From positions 147,114 through 211,113 of IMG/VR virus record IMGVR_UViG_3300043446_004613: a stretch of 64,000 nt of DNA; one strand, written 5' to 3'. The notes under the pieces were generated by a model. It searched no databases, was not told where the DNA came from, and saw nothing but the letters and a program-made list of their open reading frames with translations. Positions 33,596 through 40,158 of the stretch are shown piece after piece (positions within the stretch are counted from its first letter, which is position 1; every line of letters starts with the position of its first letter). Both the position numbers and the translations under genes were made by a program.

Positions 33596-34930
33596 ATGGC
33601 AATAAAACCACTCGATTTACCGGCAGCAGCTGGTGTTGATTATAGCGGCGGCGATGTGCGGCACTTCTCGCAAGGTGACGCTGTTAACGTGCCCGGCTTG
33701 AGCGCCCCGACACGCAATCTAGCTGAGCGCGACAATCTTATCGGGGAAAAAGTCAACGAGATCATCAGCACGGTGAACAACCGCGAACAGTTTGTTCCCC
33801 TGCCGGTAATCCGCACCACCGTACCTCCCGGCGAAGAGATCATCGTCACAAATTACCGTATTCCGGCAGGCTATGAATCGCGGGTGCTTAACGCAGTCAT
33901 CAGCGCCACGCCAACCAGCAATCTGGCGCAGCTGAACGTCTATTACTCGGATACGTATGGCGGTTCGACGGGTACAGCTGTGGTTACAACCACACCTAGC
34001 AGCGAATTCAACGGTGACGTCAATTTTTATCAGACCGGCGAATTCATCGTTTCACTGAAAAACACTGGAGCCGCCACGCTCGAACTGGCCGCCAGCTTGA
34101 TGCTGACGATGCGTCCGTTGGGTGCTGAAGGTACGCTTCTTGTCGGCACGGTCATCCAAGGCGAACAAGGGCCTCCCGGCCCGAAAGGTGCGCCCGGCCC
34201 GCAGGGGCCTCCCGGTACCGGCGGTGTTGGTTCTCCCGGCATGATCTGGCGCGGCGCTTGGTTGAACGCTACAGGCTACCTGACAAACGACGTGGTCAGC
34301 TATGACTACAGCGGAACGTACGGGTCTTGGATTTGCCGTAATGCTCATGTGTCATCGCTGGGTGTTAACGATCCGGCTGTTGATCCGGCCACTTGGAATT
34401 TTGTTAGCTACGGTATCTATGCCCAAGGCCCCGCAGGCCCTACAGGCCCTACCGGTGGTGAGCCTGTGTTCAGCCAGCAAGACATCAGCGGTACGATCTT
34501 TACGTCGAATACCTACGTGTCGCGTCCGTACAGTGCCGATTACACGGCAGGTGTCGTATCAGCTGCGAGCACTAAATATCCGATTGCTGTGCGTGAATCG
34601 GTCATCACTAACGCTTCAGGTACGATCGGCTTTGCTTTTCTGGAAGCTTCCTACAAGACATGCTTCAGCGGAAGTCTGTCTATCATACTACCGAACAAGG
34701 CGTTCAACGGCGCGGCTGCGAACTACAACACGTCCAGCATCAGCCTTCAAGTAGCAGCGGCAGGTACATTCGTGTCCGCAGGTACAGCCACGAACTCTTC
34801 AGTTTCCGGCGGGGTTTATTCCAAGCTGTTTGAGCAGACAACGTACAGTTACGGTTGGGGTATCAAGGTGCTGTCACCGGACGCGCTTCCAATGTCATTC
34901 CTGATTTCTGGCGTTCAGTCCGTTCCTTGA
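33596..34930 (+). CDS. Tail fibre with collagen-like G-X-Y repeats
   Basis: GEQGPPGPKGAPGPQGPPG, GPAGPTGPTG; W.GAW...Y..NDVV.Y motif. Confidence 0.8.
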   Translation: MAIKPLDLPAAAGVDYSGGDVRHFSQGDAVNVPGLSAPTRNLAERDNLIGEKVNEIISTVNNREQFVPLPVIRTTVPPGEEIIVTNYRIPAGYESRVLNAVISATPTSNLAQLNVYYSDTYGGSTGTAVVTTTPSSEFNGDVNFYQTGEFIVSLKNTGAATLELAASLMLTMRPLGAEGTLLVGTVIQGEQGPPGPKGAPGPQGPPGTGGVGSPGMIWRGAWLNATGYLTNDVVSYDYSGTYGSWICRNAHVSSLGVNDPAVDPATWNFVSYGIYAQGPAGPTGPTGGEPVFSQQDISGTIFTSNTYVSRPYSADYTAGVVSAASTKYPIAVRESVITNASGTIGFAFLEASYKTCFSGSLSIILPNKAFNGAAANYNTSSISLQVAAAGTFVSAGTATNSSVSGGVYSKLFEQTTYSYGWGIKVLSPDALPMSFLISGVQSVP

Positions 34931-35255
34931 TGAACTGAAGGTAGCTGGGAAAAGTACAGTCAGGAAAAAGGTCATCCACTGAAATTTTAAGCTGTTCCGC
35001 TATGCGGTTCATCGCTTCATCGTCTTTACCTTCACGGTGTAAGCGAACAAGTTCCAGATCAAAAGCTGCCAGCGCCTGCCAATCGTAGCTGCTGCGCTCC
35101 TCAGCCCTCATGACCAATGTTCCTTGGGTGTGGTGATAAGCTGCAACCAATATCGGCCATTCCCGAAGCACATAAGCAAAAACCCGGCGCATATCGTCTT
35201 TTTCGTCCTGCGTCCACGCGTGAACGTTTTTAACATGCGCACAGATTGTGTTCAT
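34863..35255 (-). CDS. Hypothetical protein
   Basis: Coupled to 35252-36391 (ATGA overlap); converges on the fibre gene. Confidence 0.5.
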   Translation of the reverse strand: MNTICAHVKNVHAWTQDEKDDMRRVFAYVLREWPILVAAYHHTQGTLVMRAEERSSYDWQALAAFDLELVRLHREGKDDEAMNRIAEQLKISVDDLFPDCTFPSYLQFIKERTERQKSGMTLEARPVTAP

Positions 35256-36391
35256 ATCGGAGGCCCCGGCGGATAGTAATAGTTGTCAGAGTAGACCGGA
35301 TCATTCGCCAGTGTGATACGCGAAGCCGATTGATTCGTATCAGGGCCGGAAAATATCCAGCTGCCATCCTCGTCGTTACAACGGAAATAGCACCAATTTG
35401 TATACGTTGATCCAGCCGCGTTCGTAAACTTACCCCGCACCAAAGCTCCGGGTTGACCACTGTTATTGCCTGAAGCTGTCCTGATAACAAGTTCGTACGG
35501 GTATTCCGCAGTTCCGACCATCTTCGAGTGTGTATTAACCCAGCTTACTTGAGCCGGTACAGCGGTAAATCCTGTGCTGTATACAAGAGATACCCATTCG
35601 CCTGAGCCTAAAAGCGGATCAGTTGGGCCGGTAGGCACGTAGCTGTTGAGTTGCCATTCAAAAATGTACGGAAGGGTACCGCCAGCAGGCAAATTAACGT
35701 AGAAGTAACCAAACTGGGTATCATCACGCCCCATCGAGCAGTAGTTGCAGTTAGTTCCGATCAAAGTCGTTATCCCCGGAAAAGCCGGACGTACCGGCTG
35801 TAGCGGGCCGCCCAGTCTGCGACTGCATGGAAGCAAAAGCTCAACGCCGTCTACGATGATACGCGCAAGGTAATCCGCAACCCGATGGCCTGCGCTATCG
35901 ACCGTGACCTGTGGGATCACTTGGTACAAGCCGCCGCTGTGTGTTTCCCAGTGTGCTTCCTGCGTGTGCGGCAGCAGCACCTGCGTATTCGTATTGATCA
36001 AGTCTTGCTCGTCTTGTGGTGTGAAGTCGGTGACCCACGCAGTACCTCCGGGCGCGGTGGTAATCGTCGGCGTGTTGAGCGTGCGGCTTATGCCTGTCTC
36101 GGGGTCTTTACCCGGAAGTGACGTGGCTTCAATCGGAACAAAGTAGTTGATGCGGTTGTAGTTCAGCACCATGTAGTAGCGACCAACGCGATCACCGTGG
36201 CTGTCCAGATACATGCTTACGTCGTTACCGGCGGCATCGTAGTAGGGCACCGGCAGGTAGCGCAAGTTGATGCCGTGCGCTTTAGACAGCGAAGCGTTAG
36301 CGTGCTTGAACAAGTTGTTTACAAGCTCAGTCTGTGCCGCTTTTATCTGCTCAAGTCGCGCACGGGTAACGAGATTTTGTTGTGAAGCCAT
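35252..36391 (-). CDS. Virion fibre-like protein with two H-x7/8-H repeat modules and a C-terminal Ig-like segment
   Basis: KHANASLSKAH..DSHGDRVGRYY..FVP and PHTQEAHWETH..DSAGHRVADYL..LLP. Confidence 0.6.
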   Translation of the reverse strand: MASQQNLVTRARLEQIKAAQTELVNNLFKHANASLSKAHGINLRYLPVPYYDAAGNDVSMYLDSHGDRVGRYYMVLNYNRINYFVPIEATSLPGKDPETGISRTLNTPTITTAPGGTAWVTDFTPQDEQDLINTNTQVLLPHTQEAHWETHSGGLYQVIPQVTVDSAGHRVADYLARIIVDGVELLLPCSRRLGGPLQPVRPAFPGITTLIGTNCNYCSMGRDDTQFGYFYVNLPAGGTLPYIFEWQLNSYVPTGPTDPLLGSGEWVSLVYSTGFTAVPAQVSWVNTHSKMVGTAEYPYELVIRTASGNNSGQPGALVRGKFTNAAGSTYTNWCYFRCNDEDGSWIFSGPDTNQSASRITLANDPVYSDNYYYPPGPPI

Positions 36392-36394
36392 AGG

Positions 36395-37525
36395 TTATCC
36401 AAGGGGCGGCAGAATCACGTTAGTTCCGGCGCTGCTTATACTGGCAGGCCCGGATATGTGGGCCAGCCCGTACATCGCGAAATTGAAGAATCCTTTCCAG
36501 AAACTGTTATGTGCCACGTAGCCATTGACCACGTACACGTCGGTAGGTTCAACATCCAGATTGTAGGTTTCAACATGTCCGCGCACGTATGACATGCGAT
36601 CGATCGTTACCGACATCCCATCTTTCCAGAGAAGGTCGCCAACAACCAAGTCCTGAACCTGACGAAAAGCCCAGATGCCAGAGCGACAGGTAAGCAGCGG
36701 ATGTTCGTAAGTAACACGAAGGTCGAGCAACTGAAAGTAACCGGTGAACTGCTGATGCAGGACGCGCTTGACCGTTGATGGTGACGCACGCATCACCAGT
36801 TCCTTAGCCGACCACGTTTTCCACGCGTCCTCGTTATCTGGATTTAGGCCGTTGATCTTGTATGACATGACCTTGTCGCCGACTTTGACATCGCAGATGA
36901 GCTTTTGCGTGCCATCAGCCATTGTAACCGGCGTGTCTGGCAAAAAGCAGCCGTCTTTGTGGTATCTGAAACCTGAACTGATCGGCGATACCGTCAAATG
37001 CGCGGAACTGCTGACCGTTGTTCCGTAGCTGTTCGATACGACTACATCGTAATTTCCACTGTTCGCTGTAGTGCAATACGGTATGAGGTAAGCGGCTGTA
37101 TTTCCGTTAGCTACGTTTGTGCCGTTGAAACGCCACTGATAGCTCATTTCCACCGGGCTGATAGCTTTAACCACAAACTCTGCCGGATCAGTTGTATACA
37201 CAGATAGCGGCTCCGGTTGGCGCACAATGTACGGCGTGCTTCCAACCTCGTAGGCTGTCGAACCGGATATGATTGCAGGCAGTGTAAAGGCAGCATCGCC
37301 GGTACCGTCTACGTTGGTACCTGTCAGCTGCACCCGCAGCAGAAAAGCGCCGTTTATGGTATGACCCGTGTCGTGCTCAGCGAAAGTTGTGCCGTAAAAG
37401 CGCACTTGATTATGAGCGCCCCAGTCCCCAGATGCGTGGGCGGCGGCGGAGTTCTCGTAACCGGTAACGGCTTGATAAACGGCAGCTTCGCTGGCAGACG
37501 TCAGTATGTTTACGTTCTGCCGCAT
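36395..37525 (-). CDS. Virion protein: H-x7-H module, Ig domain and Hint/mini-intein
   Basis: Ig: RQPE...SYQWRFNGTN...SGNYDVVVSNSYG; Hint from C193 to N340. Confidence 0.85.
   Translation of the reverse strand: MRQNVNILTSASEAAVYQAVTGYENSAAAHASGDWGAHNQVRFYGTTFAEHDTGHTINGAFLLRVQLTGTNVDGTGDAAFTLPAIISGSTAYEVGSTPYIVRQPEPLSVYTTDPAEFVVKAISPVEMSYQWRFNGTNVANGNTAAYLIPYCTTANSGNYDVVVSNSYGTTVSSSAHLTVSPISSGFRYHKDGCFLPDTPVTMADGTQKLICDVKVGDKVMSYKINGLNPDNEDAWKTWSAKELVMRASPSTVKRVLHQQFTGYFQLLDLRVTYEHPLLTCRSGIWAFRQVQDLVVGDLLWKDGMSVTIDRMSYVRGHVETYNLDVEPTDVYVVNGYVAHNSFWKGFFNFAMYGLAHISGPASISSAGTNVILPPLG
36506..36949 (-). mobile_element. Mini-intein / Hint domain (148 aa)
   Basis: Block A CFLPDTPV, block B TYEHP, block F VETYNLDV, block G VVNGYVAHN followed by Ser; no endonuclease domain. 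Confidence 0.85.
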
Positions 37526-37532
37526 GTTTTAA

Positions 37533-37991
37533 TTATTCGCGTGGCGGCTCAGGCAAAGCAATCTCTTCTTCGCCAGCACCTTCAGGTGAAGCCAGTTGTT
37601 CGGCTGTTTCTGCCTCGCTGGGTTCTTCGCCGGGTTCAGGCAGACCAGCTTCTGGGCCGCCTTCGACCGGAGCTTCCATGCTCTCAGGCTCTTGTGTCGG
37701 CACCTCTTGCGCGTCTTCTGGCGCACCGGCATCTGGCGGCGCATTAGGCGGGAGCGGGATAGCCATATCGCTTTCCGCATCACCTTCGCCCTCACCTTCA
37801 CCCTTGCCTTCATCCTCCTCTTCGCCGGGGCCGGGCACGCGTTCCATGTACCACTGCCATTCCGCGTTGAGTTCGTCGGCAACAGGATCACTGTGGTTAT
37901 TGGCCAGCGCTGCTGCGATCGCCTCGATTTGACCCCAGCTAAGTTCTAACTTATAATCGTTATAAGTTTTTTTAATCTTTTCGAGTTTCAT
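37533..37991 (-). CDS. Acidic, Glu/Pro-rich low-complexity protein
   Basis: Folded-looking N-terminal ~55 aa, then a disordered EGEG/EP-rich tail. Confidence 0.65.
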   Translation of the reverse strand: MKLEKIKKTYNDYKLELSWGQIEAIAAALANNHSDPVADELNAEWQWYMERVPGPGEEEDEGKGEGEGEGDAESDMAIPLPPNAPPDAGAPEDAQEVPTQEPESMEAPVEGGPEAGLPEPGEEPSEAETAEQLASPEGAGEEEIALPEPPRE

Positions 37992-38213: not shown

Positions 38214-39350
38214 ATGAATCTGATCACATTCAATGACCCGATCACAATCGCCTTCAAGAAAAGCGCCGGTGGCGTCACTCAAACCTTTGAAGCCAACCGT
38301 CCATACCTGATCGCCAATGCGCAGATTGAGCGCATCATGCGCGATCAACAAGTCAGCGGACGCGCTTACAAAATCAGCCGCGCCGACACACGTATTCCGA
38401 ACGCGCATAAAGCCGCTTTCAACCGTAATGACAGCGTTCTGATCTACAACGGCAGCGGCGGCTACGGCGACCAGATTTTGACTTGGCCGGTGGCGCGTTA
38501 TCTTGCCAATCAGGGTTTGAAAGTCCACGTCTTAACTGACCCCGGCAACAACGTATGCTGGTGGGGATTTGACTTCGTCAAGACGGTGAACACGATTCCG
38601 TTGCTTTGGGAGACTGTTCAGCTATATGACCACTTCATCCACTGGGAGGCGGTGGTTAACATGGACGAGCATCAGGATCAGGAGCATCCGATTGACATGA
38701 TGTTCCGCAAGATAGGCTACGATCCGGCGGATATTTCGGCTGAGGACAAGTGCGTGCGCCCTGTGTTTACGCCAAGTGAACTAGGCACCTTGAACAAATA
38801 CGTGACTTCCGGCAAGCGCGTCGGTCTTTACCAGCTATCCAGTGCCAATCCAGTGCGCTGCCTGCCTGCGGCGGACAGCGTGTTCTTGATCATGAAGATT
38901 GCTGAAGCCTATCCTGACATTCACTGGCTCTGCCTGCATGACGAGTTTGTGCCCAAGGAGTACAAAGAGACACTGGCTGTTGAAATTACCAAGCGCGGTT
39001 TTACGAATGTGGAAGGTTTTACGGCTCCTAATCTGCGCGAACTGTGGGCGCTGACAGAGCACGTGAATGTGGTTATCAGCCCTGACAGCATGATGGCCCA
39101 CATCGCCGGAGCTTTCGGTACTCCCTGCGTAGGTCTTTGGGGGCCGATGTCACCGGAAAGTCGGATGAAATACTACAAGAACCACCACCCGATCTACCAT
39201 CGCGAGTTCTGCCCGCACAGCCCCTGCTTTGTATACAGTAACACATTCCCGAAATATTGTCCGCCTCGCGCAAATCGCAATGTCTGCGACGTTATGGCCG
39301 GTATTTCGCCTTCGGAAGTGATTAGCGCTATCGGTCACATCTGTAGATAG
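38214..39350 (+). CDS. GT9-like (heptosyltransferase-like) glycosyltransferase
   Basis: GGYGDQI, LRELWALTEHVNVVISPDS..AHIAGAFGTPCVGLWGP; C-terminal C..SPC...C...C cluster. Confidence 0.88.
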   Translation: MNLITFNDPITIAFKKSAGGVTQTFEANRPYLIANAQIERIMRDQQVSGRAYKISRADTRIPNAHKAAFNRNDSVLIYNGSGGYGDQILTWPVARYLANQGLKVHVLTDPGNNVCWWGFDFVKTVNTIPLLWETVQLYDHFIHWEAVVNMDEHQDQEHPIDMMFRKIGYDPADISAEDKCVRPVFTPSELGTLNKYVTSGKRVGLYQLSSANPVRCLPAADSVFLIMKIAEAYPDIHWLCLHDEFVPKEYKETLAVEITKRGFTNVEGFTAPNLRELWALTEHVNVVISPDSMMAHIAGAFGTPCVGLWGPMSPESRMKYYKNHHPIYHREFCPHSPCFVYSNTFPKYCPPRANRNVCDVMAGISPSEVISAIGHICR

Positions 39351-39484
39351 TTCATGAACGATGAACCGATAAATACTGAGTATATTGATCCCGAGGCTGA
39401 ACGCTATCGGTCACATCTGTAGATAGTTCATGAACGATGAACCGTTAAATCCTGAGCATCTTGATCCCGAAGCTGAACGCTATC
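39326..39484 (+). repeat. 76-bp tandem duplication of a gene junction
   Basis: CGCTATC at 39326, 39402 and 39478; first 43 nt identical, then 5 substitutions; first copy encodes MNDEPINTEYIDPEAERYRSHL*. Confidence 0.9.
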
Positions 39485-40158
39485 TCAGCCAGCTTCCGCC
39501 CGCGCCGCCAGACGATACGCTTCAAGGTGTCGTTTCCGCGCTGCAACCGTTGGGCATTACAGAGCTTAAGGTGCAATATTCCGGCTATGGTGACAGTGGA
39601 GACATCGACTACATCAGCATAGAGCCGTCTGACATCGTTTTGCCGGATAAGTTCGATGAAGTGGTTAAAGACGTTGCGTGGAAAACAGCCTACAATCTAC
39701 ACTCCGGATTTGAGAATAACGAAGGTGGTCAAGGTCATGTAACTTTTGATTTTAACGATAGAACGGTCACGGTATATCACACAGACAATGTTGAGTTCGA
39801 CGAGGAACTGAACATGCCGAATTTACCTTTGCCGGAAGAATTTCGGGAATACACTGGGGATGACGGATCGTGCTACATTAGCTTCTACATGGGCAGCGAT
39901 GGTGATGTCTACTTCAATGATAAAACTGAAGGCATCGATGAAGATGCAAACAATGTTGGGGCTATTTCAACGCTTGTTTTTGATAACGCAGACTTAGGGG
40001 AAAATGATTCCTACTCTGGAGCAGTGCGCTGGCAAAATGGCTCAGACACCTGCTCTATCAGAGGCACGAAATCATGGACAGCGACTGACGAGGATAATGC
40101 CTCTGTAAACACGTATACGTTCGATGAAATTTTAGCGAATGAGCAGCTAGGTACCTAA
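39430..40158 (+). CDS. DUF6878-like protein (possibly two domains)
   Basis: VQYSGYGDSGDI...GFENNEGGQGHVTFD; adjacent to a DUF6915-like gene. Confidence 0.6.
   Translation: MNDEPLNPEHLDPEAERYLSQLPPAPPDDTLQGVVSALQPLGITELKVQYSGYGDSGDIDYISIEPSDIVLPDKFDEVVKDVAWKTAYNLHSGFENNEGGQGHVTFDFNDRTVTVYHTDNVEFDEELNMPNLPLPEEFREYTGDDGSCYISFYMGSDGDVYFNDKTEGIDEDANNVGAISTLVFDNADLGENDSYSGAVRWQNGSDTCSIRGTKSWTATDEDNASVNTYTFDEILANEQLGT

What the first reader, a model, noticed from the sequence alone, without database searches (positions are those of the whole stretch)
36395..37525. Mini-intein/Hint domain in an Ig-domain virion protein with only a 36-aa C-extein
Seen in sequence: C193 (CFLPDT), TxxH block B, block F, and terminal HN340 followed by Ser341, which is the full set of splicing residues. 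There is no endonuclease. Phage inteins usually sit in conserved replication or packaging enzymes. Here splicing or cleavage would join, or release, the short hydrophobic peptide SFWKGFFNFAMYGLAHISG... relative to the Ig domain. Inference: regulated autoprocessing of a fibre tip, or BIL-type ligation to another molecule, rather than a selfish element.
Basis: partly seen in the sequence, partly recalled or inferred. Interest (0 to 1): 0.68.

Follow-up and report, generated by a model that had tools for sequence, protein, structure and literature searches.

The report
Intein-like domain on phage Ig protein
A large phage's small surface protein ends in a real self-cutting intein-like domain that is old and inherited rather than mobile, and it belongs to a wide group of phage fibre and decoration proteins in which a lysine just after the domain, not the usual serine or cysteine, is the conserved residue.

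Summary
ORF 36395-37525 (-) encodes 376 aa: an unexplained N-domain, one Ig domain, a 148-aa Hint domain (Cys193, T272xxH275, His339-Asn340) with no endonuclease, Ser341 and a 36-aa tail. The fold is confident and its closest relatives by sequence profile and by structure are the two studied bacterial intein-like (BIL) domains, not canonical inteins.

In 43 orthologues Cys193, Thr272, His275, Asn340 and Lys344 never change, but +1 is Asn in 30 and Ser in only 5. Four orthologues in the same operon lack the Hint; one joins the Ig domain directly to the tail. They are scattered in the tree. Hint and host protein diverged together, so this is an old resident lost repeatedly, not a mobile intein.

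In 80 of the 87 closest relatives with a single unbroken Hint (50%-identity representatives), it sits 1-20 aa from the C-terminus, and many of these proteins match phage fibre, tail or decoration families. All 80 tails hold a Lys (17 expected) and Arg is not enriched.

Best reading: a type-A BIL-like self-excising domain on a decoration-type protein, with the acyl group probably passing to Lys344. "Fibre tip" is not supported. Nothing was tested biochemically.

The parts
36395..37525 (-). Whole gene, 376 aa plus stop: N-domain, Ig domain, Hint domain and tail (P0001)
   Evidence: About 46 orthologues of 347-376 aa
37241..37525 (-). N-terminal domain, residues 1-95, of unknown fold. The invariant motif AAH..GD.G.HNQ lies here. 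It may be the part that attaches to the virion
   Evidence: Invariant columns. Low pLDDT. No Pfam, PHROG or Atlas match
36980..37240 (-). Ig-like (I-set type) domain, residues 96-182
   Evidence: Best solved relative is 9C2D chain S, Sf14 gp20, a Hoc-like decoration protein
36950..36979 (-). Linker SSGFRYHKDG, ending in the invariant Gly192 (the -1 residue)
   Evidence: The -1 residue is Gly in 50 of 80 related C-terminal Hints
36506..36949 (-). 148-aa mini-Hint domain, type-A BIL-like, residues 193-340
   Evidence: 16 residues are invariant over 43 orthologues
36947..36949 (-). Cys193, first Hint residue, predicted thioester nucleophile
   Evidence: Invariant in 43 of 43 orthologues. Cys in 79 and Ser in 1 of the 80 relatives
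36701..36712 (-). Block B, Thr272-Tyr-Glu-His275
   Evidence: T272, E274, H275 and P276 are invariant
36506..36511 (-). His339-Asn340, the end of the Hint, predicted site of Asn cyclisation
   Evidence: N340 is invariant and H339 is present in all but one orthologue. All 80 relatives end in HN
36503..36505 (-). Ser341, the +1 residue. It is a possible canonical nucleophile in this phage only
   Evidence: Across the family +1 is N 30, S 5, P 3, V 3, G 1, I 1
36494..36496 (-). Lys344 (+4), proposed acyl acceptor
   Evidence: Invariant in the A1 alignment. Every one of the 43 Hint-bearing orthologues has a Lys in its tail. All 80 tails of related C-terminal Hints hold a Lys, mostly at +4 to +6. 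The Hint-less P0039 tail has no Lys
36398..36505 (-). 36-aa C-terminal tail, aromatic and hydrophobic. It is homologous to the family tail (N/S)FFKSVWRFITPETAI.G
   Evidence: Disordered in the model
37533..37991 (-). Upstream gene of the conserved operon: a 152-aa acidic, Gly/Glu/Pro-rich protein
35252..36391 (-). Downstream gene of the operon, 379 aa, function unknown. Its start lies 4 nt after the stop of the Hint gene
   Evidence: No family match. The fold failed
34863..35255 (-). Fourth gene of the operon, 130 aa
   Evidence: a 126-129 aa gene lies at the same place in relatives

Best explanation
Residues 193-340 form a type-A BIL-like (bacterial intein-like) Hint domain. It has been a long-term, vertically inherited part of a small Ig-bearing virion surface protein of a T4-like jumbo phage; the host protein has the layout of a pb10/Hoc-type decoration protein. 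After translation the domain removes itself. Cys193 attacks the Gly192-Cys193 bond to form a thioester, and Asn340 cyclises to cut the bond to residue 341. The acyl group of Gly192 is then passed to an amine of the short tail. The most likely acceptor is the epsilon-amine of the invariant Lys344, giving an isopeptide-branched product as shown for Tetrahymena BIL2. In this phage Ser341 could also serve by the canonical route. The mature protein is therefore N-domain plus Ig domain carrying the hydrophobic tail, the same composition that the Hint-less allele P0039 encodes directly. Shown here: the fold, the residue conservation, BIL affinity, the distribution, vertical inheritance and repeated loss. 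Inferred: that the chemistry happens, and which nucleophile resolves the thioester.
For: HINT fold with pLDDT above 90 over most of 193-340; the top Foldseek hits are BIL2 (6Y75/6TMM, TM 0.76-0.78) and the C. thermocellum BIL (2LWY, TM 0.80). The Hint-only profile hits 2LWY at 1e-10 and BIL2 at 7e-10, against 1e-5 for the best true intein and 0.014 for Hedgehog. C193, T272, H275 and N340 are invariant in 43 orthologues, and the Hint diverges at the same rate as the rest of the protein (0.405 against 0.408). +1 is not conserved. Each of the 43 orthologue tails has a Lys. All 80 short tails of related C-terminal Hints have a Lys, against 17.3 expected from composition and 24-36% in ordinary C-termini; Arg is at 0.68x. 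In tandem arrays +1 is Lys at 94 junctions and Arg at 6. BIL2 forms a Lys isopeptide bond (PMC8616854), and type-A BILs cleave or splice without a +1 nucleophile (PMC4031507). P0039 has the Ig domain joined directly to the tail, in the same operon. There is no endonuclease, this is the only Hint in the genome, extein and Hint distances correlate at r=0.80 with Mantel 0 of 2000, and GC content is not unusual.
Against: No biochemical data exist for any member. The Lys could have a non-nucleophilic role. Three orthologues (P0070, P0072, P0075) lack both Hint and tail, so the tail is not essential, and plain cleavage would give the same product as those alleles. The query has Ser341, so canonical splicing is chemically possible here. 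Only one Hint-less allele with a tail is known.
Confidence: 0.55

Rival explanations
1. Cleavage only. The Hint is a removable C-terminal pro-domain (a folding or assembly aid, or a timer). The thioester is hydrolysed and the tail is discarded. The mature protein is N-domain plus Ig ending at Gly192, like the 180-aa alleles.
For: Reviews say cleavage products dominate for type-A BILs. Three orthologues consist of N-domain plus Ig only. Most relatives have tails of just 5-8 aa that look too short to function.
Against: This does not explain why Asn340 and a tail Lys are invariant, nor why the family tail is conserved over about 20 aa. P0039 keeps the tail after losing the Hint.
Confidence: 0.2
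2. An ordinary class-1 mini-intein. It splices through Ser341 and is a neutral or selfish passenger.
For: This sequence has Cys1, TxxH, HN and Ser+1. A Hint-less allele with matching flanks exists. Related true inteins occur in Vibrio phage helicases, with +1 Cys.
Against: +1 is Asn, Pro, Val, Gly or Ile in 38 of 43 orthologues and Ser appears in scattered positions on the tree. There is no endonuclease. The Hint co-diverged with its host protein. The profile matches BILs 100,000 times better than inteins. The host site is a variable C-terminal end, not a conserved enzyme site.
Confidence: 0.13
3. A ligation warhead. The thioester is kept until an outside amine attacks it, either another virion protein or a molecule on the host surface. 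The Ig protein is then fixed covalently, in the manner of Hedgehog or BIL transfer.
For: BIL2 can pass its N-flank to other proteins. The Hint sits at the outer end of surface proteins with adhesion-type domains (Ig, fn3, BACON, collagen).
Against: A built-in Lys is always present next to the site and would compete. No conserved partner was identified, and there are no data.
Confidence: 0.08
4. An inactive relic. The Hint stays attached as a structural C-terminal domain.
For: None is specific. Processing has not been observed.
Against: All catalytic residues are invariant over 43 orthologues at about 40% mean divergence, and over 80 more distant relatives.
Confidence: 0.04

Closest known systems
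Type-A bacterial intein-like (BIL) domains, e.g. the Clostridium thermocellum BIL (PDB 2LWY)
   Same: Mini-Hint with Cys1, TxxH and a C-terminal His-Asn. There is no conserved +1 nucleophile and no endonuclease, and the domain sits in a variable surface protein rather than a conserved enzyme. It is the best PDB hit by profile (1e-10) and among the best by fold (TM 0.80).
   Different: Here the domain lies at the extreme C-terminus of phage virion proteins, and a Lys always follows within a few residues. I found no mention of this in the papers I could read. The sequence motifs that define type A were not compared one by one.
Tetrahymena thermophila BIL2 of the BUBL1 locus (PDB 6Y75, 6TMM)
   Same: It is the top Foldseek hit and the second-best profile hit. 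It lacks a +1 nucleophile and is reported to join its N-flank to a Lys side chain by an isopeptide bond.
   Different: BIL2 sits between two ubiquitin-like domains in a eukaryote and conjugates a ubiquitin-like protein. Here the flanks are an Ig domain and a short peptide in a phage. Lys chemistry is only inferred here.
Canonical class-1 mini-inteins, e.g. the Vibrio phage 13VV501A helicase intein, gp41-1 and the DnaB mini-inteins
   Same: The same fold and the same catalytic blocks, and this one sequence even has Ser at +1.
   Different: Those inteins sit inside conserved sites of replication enzymes with a conserved +1 Cys, Ser or Thr and long C-exteins. This one has a variable +1, a tail of 3-36 aa, and a much weaker profile match (1e-5 or worse).
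Hedgehog C-terminal (Hog) autoprocessing domain
   Same: A C-terminal Hint domain that releases the N-terminal part of the protein through a thioester.
   Different: From general knowledge, Hog domains have no terminal Asn and pass the acyl group to cholesterol through a sterol-recognition region. Here His-Asn is invariant and there is no such region. Profile E is 0.014.
Intramolecular chaperone auto-cleavage domains at the C-termini of phage tailspikes and fibres (Peptidase_S74)
   Same: A self-removing C-terminal domain on phage surface proteins. This is an analogy of role and rests on general knowledge.
   Different: An unrelated fold and chemistry (a Ser-Lys dyad). No Pfam match here.
Ig-bearing capsid decoration proteins (T4 Hoc, T5 pb10, Sf14 gp20)
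   Same: An N-terminal binding domain followed by one or more Ig-like domains. Sf14 gp20 is the best solved match to the Ig domain (1e-18), and Hoc-like PHROGs also match.
   Different: The N-domain shows no detectable similarity to known capsid-binding domains. None of the named proteins is reported to carry a Hint domain. Where the protein sits in the virion was not shown.

Membership tests
HINT superfamily | Hint fold | tested here: met
   AlphaFold2 pLDDT above 90 over most of 193-340. Foldseek TM 0.75-0.81 to BIL domains and mini-inteins
HINT superfamily | N-terminal Cys/Ser nucleophile and block B TxxH | tested here: met
   C193, T272 and H275 are invariant in 43 orthologues
Type-A BIL domain | C-terminal His-Asn | tested here: met
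   N340 is invariant and H339 is present in all but one orthologue
Type-A BIL domain | No conserved +1 Cys/Ser/Thr | tested here: met
   +1 is N 30, S 5, P 3, V 3, G 1, I 1 in 43 orthologues. It is Ala, Val, Lys, Ile and others in 80 relatives. The query itself has Ser
Type-A BIL domain | Sits in variable, non-conserved (surface or secreted) proteins and not at conserved enzyme sites; no homing endonuclease | tested here: met
   The host is an Ig-bearing virion-type protein. Relatives carry collagen, Ig, fn3, BACON and tail-fibre domains. The Hint is 148 aa and contiguous
Type-A BIL domain | Closer in sequence to known type-A BILs than to inteins, type-B BILs or Hog domains | tested here: inconclusive
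   The profile hits 2LWY and BIL2 at about 1e-10, against 1e-5 or worse for inteins and Hog domains. No type-B BIL structure or curated BIL motif set was available for comparison
Type-A BIL domain | Autocleavage or splicing activity | not testable with these tools
   Needs expression and mass spectrometry
Canonical (class 1) intein | Conserved +1 nucleophile used for trans-esterification | tested here: not met
   Ser in only 5 of 43 orthologues, scattered on the tree
Canonical (class 1) intein | Mobile element: sporadic distribution with empty alleles, and horizontal spread | tested here: not met
   Empty alleles exist, but they are nested losses (AU p 0.027). Hint and extein co-diverge at r 0.80. 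No endonuclease and no GC anomaly
Hedgehog-type Hog domain | No terminal Asn; acyl transfer to a sterol through a sterol-recognition region | tested here: not met
   His-Asn is invariant, only 3-36 aa follow the domain, and profile E is 0.014
Hoc/pb10-type capsid decoration protein (host protein) | Capsid-binding domain plus Ig-like domain(s), located on the capsid | tested here: inconclusive
   The Ig domain matches Sf14 gp20 and Hoc-like PHROGs. The N-domain is unexplained. The protein's place in the virion is unknown

The most novel reading that the evidence does not exclude
A large subfamily of Hint domains uses a lysine placed +1 to +8 after His-Asn as its built-in acyl acceptor. Many of its members match phage fibre, tail and decoration protein families. 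'Splicing' in this subfamily would make an isopeptide branch between the last residue of the N-flank (usually Gly) and the tail Lys. That would be a third kind of nucleophile for protein splicing in prokaryotic viruses. Tandem Hint-Lys-Gly(n) arrays would be a related, unexplained use of the same chemistry. The window's protein, with Gly192, Cys193, Asn340 and Lys344, would be a simple model for testing it.
Probability: 0.35. Interest if true: 0.8.

Novelty: new variant of a known kind. Interest (0 to 1): 0.62.

Why it matters
BIL domains have been known since 2003, but what they do in nature is still unclear. This case offers a well-sampled family of orthologues that has natural 'already processed' alleles: one keeps the tail and three have neither Hint nor tail. 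It also yields a simple sequence rule, Gly(-1), Cys1 ... His-Asn, then a Lys within a few residues, that held in all 80 related C-terminal Hints examined. If the Lys is the nucleophile, isopeptide-forming protein splicing is common in phages, and so far it has been reported only for a Tetrahymena polyubiquitin-like locus. That would also give protein engineers a compact ligation module that is specific for Lys and needs no ATP. For phage biology, it would show that many fibre and decoration proteins are matured by a self-removing C-terminal Hint domain. This would be a second, unrelated solution beside the known intramolecular chaperone domains. Relatives occur in cultured phages (Dickeya phage AD1 gp108 and Erwinia jumbo phages), so the idea can be tested.

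Tried and rejected
(1) A megablast of the region against phage records found nothing.

(2) NCBIfam gave only sub-threshold intein hits.

(3) Geometry of Lys344 relative to Cys193 could not be measured. The model's coordinates are not exposed to scripts and the tail is poorly modelled.

(4) The fold of the downstream 379-aa protein, built from five orthologues, failed (mean pLDDT 37), so no fold search was run on it.

(5) I tested whether the N-termini of the Hint protein and the downstream protein are related. BLASTP found nothing. hhalign aligned residues 1-59 with 1-60 but with probability below 1% and E 0.076, so the idea was rejected as unsupported.

(6) An Atlas search with the N-domain gave no usable hit.

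(7) Literature searches for Hint or BIL domains in phage fibres, for a Lys rule, and for virion mass spectrometry of Dickeya phage AD1 gp108 found nothing relevant. The library lacks most subscription papers, including the original BIL papers, so prior description cannot be excluded.

(8) Recent insertion was rejected on GC content and co-divergence.

(9) A frameshift as the cause of the query's odd tail was rejected. Its end (…SSAGTNVILPPLG) lines up with the tails of P0024-P0034 (…GAGQPLLPFGG).

(10) I did not build, search or fold the joined N-flank plus tail sequence. Its parts were examined by reference only.

(11) Complex prediction, read laying and the look-up of sequencing runs were not used, because no claim here rests on them.

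Full report
**What is there**

The window is the last 64 kb of a 211,113-bp virus record that CheckV rates 93% complete. Around the finding lie a T4-type portal gene, a gp25-like baseplate wedge gene and a 444-aa fibre-like protein with a collagen-like Gly-Pro stretch. A family-9 glycosyltransferase and a helicase lie on the other side.

The finding is the second gene of a four-gene minus-strand operon:
- 37533-37991: an acidic 152-aa protein.
- 36395-37525: the Hint protein, P0001.
- 35252-36391: a 379-aa protein of unknown function.
- 34863-35255: a 130-aa protein.

The operon and its neighbours are in the same order in relatives that are only 34-60% identical.

**The observation**

A 36-aa tail follows. 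The Hint is 148 aa and unbroken, so it holds no endonuclease.

On the single sequence, Pfam hits to the Hint clan fall below the curated thresholds. The domain is real all the same:
- 36 of 37 orthologues hit PF01079, and most also hit other Hint families.
- AlphaFold2 with 37 orthologues gives pLDDT above 90 for most of the Ig domain (96-182) and of the Hint (193-340).
- Foldseek's best matches to the Hint are the BIL2 domain of Tetrahymena (6Y75/6TMM, TM 0.76-0.78), the Clostridium thermocellum BIL (2LWY, TM 0.80) and then mini-inteins.

**Which kind of Hint**

I built a profile of the Hint alone from the window, two orthologues, Dickeya phage AD1 gp108 and Phage NCTB BN7874_132 (alignment A3). 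It hits 2LWY at 1e-10 and BIL2 at 7e-10. The best true intein scores 1e-5 and Hedgehog 0.014. The identity of 6Y75/6TMM as BIL2 comes from PMC8616854.

According to reviews, type-A BILs end in His-Asn, lack the +1 nucleophile, sit in variable non-conserved proteins and mostly cleave, though they can splice (PMC7664689, PMC7765530, PMC4031507). The window's domain meets each of these features that sequence can test.

**The family**

Word-based searches found about 46 orthologues. In the 43 that carry the Hint:
- C193, F194, T198, L269, T272, E274, H275, P276, R281, W285, F287, D297, N322, E326, D329 and N340 never vary.
- Gly192 is invariant in the 37-sequence alignment, and so is Lys344, the Lys of the FFK motif.
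- The +1 residue is Asn in 30, Ser in 5, Pro in 3, Val in 3, Gly in 1 and Ile in 1. The five Ser cases are scattered over the tree.
- Tails run from 3 to 36 aa and most begin (N/S)FFKS.

Canonical trans-esterification through +1 is therefore not what selection maintains, although this phage could use Ser341.

**Hint-less alleles**

- P0039 (236 aa) reads ...LTVQPLSAAFNVRQRSRGG|FFDNFWRFLPVILAPTPEIAITG.... The Ig domain is joined directly to a tail that is homologous to the family tail.
- P0039 sits in the same operon. Its upstream neighbour is 33% identical to the window's, and its downstream neighbour is 58% identical.
- Three further orthologues (P0070, P0072, P0075; 179-181 aa) stop right after the Ig domain and are followed by the usual downstream gene.

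On a tree of the N-domain plus Ig part, the four Hint-less rows are scattered among Hint-bearing ones, and all deep branches carry the Hint. An AU test rejects placing the four together (p 0.027).

Other evidence agrees with long residence:
- Pairwise distances of Hint and of host protein correlate (r 0.80; Mantel 0 of 2000 permutations), and both have the same mean divergence of about 0.41.
- The Hint has ordinary GC content.
- It is the only Hint in the genome.

So the Hint is an old, vertically inherited part of this protein that was lost at least twice. It is not a recently mobile intein. Both kinds of loss allele tell us what products are tolerated: Ig with the tail, and Ig alone.

**The wider class and the lysine**

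A full HMMER search with residues 190-345 found 1765 representatives at E up to 1e-3. I re-analysed 149 of the 150 best with a family HMM.
- 87 have one unbroken mini-Hint. In 80 of these it ends 1-20 residues before the C-terminus.
- Of the 80, 79 start with Cys and one with Ser, and all 80 end in His-Asn.
- The -1 residue is Gly in 50.
- +1 is Ala, Val, Lys, Ile, Ser and others.
- All 80 tails contain a Lys. From each protein's own composition 17.3 are expected, and none of 200,000 simulations came near 80. Ordinary ORFs of this genome have a Lys in their last 5-8 residues in 24-36% of cases.
- The first Lys lies at +4 to +6 in 50 tails and at +1 or +2 in 15.
- Arg is not enriched (0.68x).

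The N-terminal parts of these proteins are varied. Some match collagen repeats, Ig, fn3, BACON, tail-collar fibre, gp38 and gp53-like domains, and tail-fibre, tail, virion-structural and Hoc-like PHROGs.

Cultured examples follow the same rule: AD1 gp108 (...AHN|TDIVAKAEKK) and NCTB BN7874_132 (...VHN|APVDQKH).

A further 49 representatives carry tandem Hints joined only by Lys-Gly(n). There, Lys is at +1 at 94 junctions and Arg at 6.

As a control, a related true intein in the Vibrio phage 13VV501A helicase reads ...VVHN|CHHV..., with a long C-extein.

In the window Lys344 is at +4. The one Hint-less tail, P0039, has no Lys at all, and Asp stands where the Lys would be.

**Mechanism**

The strict preference for Lys over Arg points to the Lys amine acting as a nucleophile rather than as a charge. 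So do its variable but short distance from His-Asn, the small -1 residue, and the reported Lys-isopeptide chemistry of the closest solved relative, BIL2.

I therefore propose three steps:
1. An N-S acyl shift at Gly192-Cys193.
2. Attack on the thioester by Lys344, or in this phage possibly by Ser341.
3. Cyclisation of Asn340, which frees the Hint.

The product is the N-domain and Ig domain carrying the tail. This is inference, and nothing here shows that the reaction occurs. The alternatives are hydrolysis (cleavage only), ligation through the alpha-amine as proposed for type-A BILs, canonical Ser341 splicing, and transfer to an outside nucleophile. All are listed with odds under the rivals.

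**The host protein**

The best solved relative of the Ig domain is chain S of 9C2D (1e-18). This is Sf14 gp20, a Hoc-like capsid decoration protein with an N-terminal capsid-binding domain. Hoc-like PHROGs match too. The 180-aa alleles have the layout that the Sf14 paper describes for T5 pb10. The N-domain itself remains unexplained. 'Fibre tip' is thus not supported, and a decoration-type surface protein is more likely but not shown.

**Limits**

- There is no experiment behind any of this.
- Only one Hint-less allele keeps the tail.
- The top-150 sample is of cluster representatives and was chosen by similarity to the query.
- The original BIL papers were not in the searchable library, so the Lys rule may have been noted before.

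Noticed in passing
P0115, P0117, P0119, P0122, P0131, P0132, P0142, P0174, P0216 and about 40 more; not in the window: Proteins with 2-9 tandem Hint domains separated only by Lys-Gly(1-4) linkers (...HN|K-G-G-C-F-L-P...). The arrays often end in Gly-rich tails. Lys is at +1 at 94 junctions. What such arrays produce is unknown.
   Followed up: partly
window 34863-37991 (-); L003, L005, L007, L008, L009: A conserved four-gene operon: an acidic Gly/Glu/Pro-rich protein of about 150 aa, the Ig(-Hint) protein, a protein of about 370 aa and a protein of about 130 aa. It always lies between the portal/gp25/fibre genes and a GT9 glycosyltransferase. None of the three partner proteins matches any family.
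   Followed up: partly
window 35252-36391 (-): The 379-aa downstream protein has many invariant His, Asp and Gly positions across five orthologues, but no Pfam or PHROG match, and its model is unusable (pLDDT 37). Its first 60 residues align collinearly with the Hint protein's N-terminus in hhalign, though not significantly.
   Followed up: partly
window 38214-39350 (+): A phage-encoded family-9 glycosyltransferase (heptosyltransferase-like, PF01075, E 2.6e-10) lies next to the operon and is conserved in relatives. It might modify a virion protein or the host LPS.
   Followed up: no
window 33596-34930 (+): A 444-aa fibre-like protein with a collagen-like Gly-Pro stretch (about residues 190-215) and a match to tail-fibre phrog_5073. 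It converges on the operon from the other strand.
   Followed up: no
P0033 and P0069 tails: Two orthologues have a doubled motif after His-Asn (NFFDS-FFKSVWRF and GFFSD-FFKSVWRF). The Hint-less P0039 keeps an FFDN-FWRF version without the Lys unit. This hints at how the Hint and the Lys-bearing unit were deleted together.
   Followed up: partly
PDB 8W20 chain A, residues 1085-1221: A solved 1368-aa 'Intein C-terminal splicing domain-containing protein' matches the Hint profile at 1.3e-5. I did not look up what it is.
   Followed up: no
window 39430-40158 (+): A 242-aa acidic protein with a DUF6878 match (E 1.6e-11) lies between the glycosyltransferase and the helicase.
   Followed up: no
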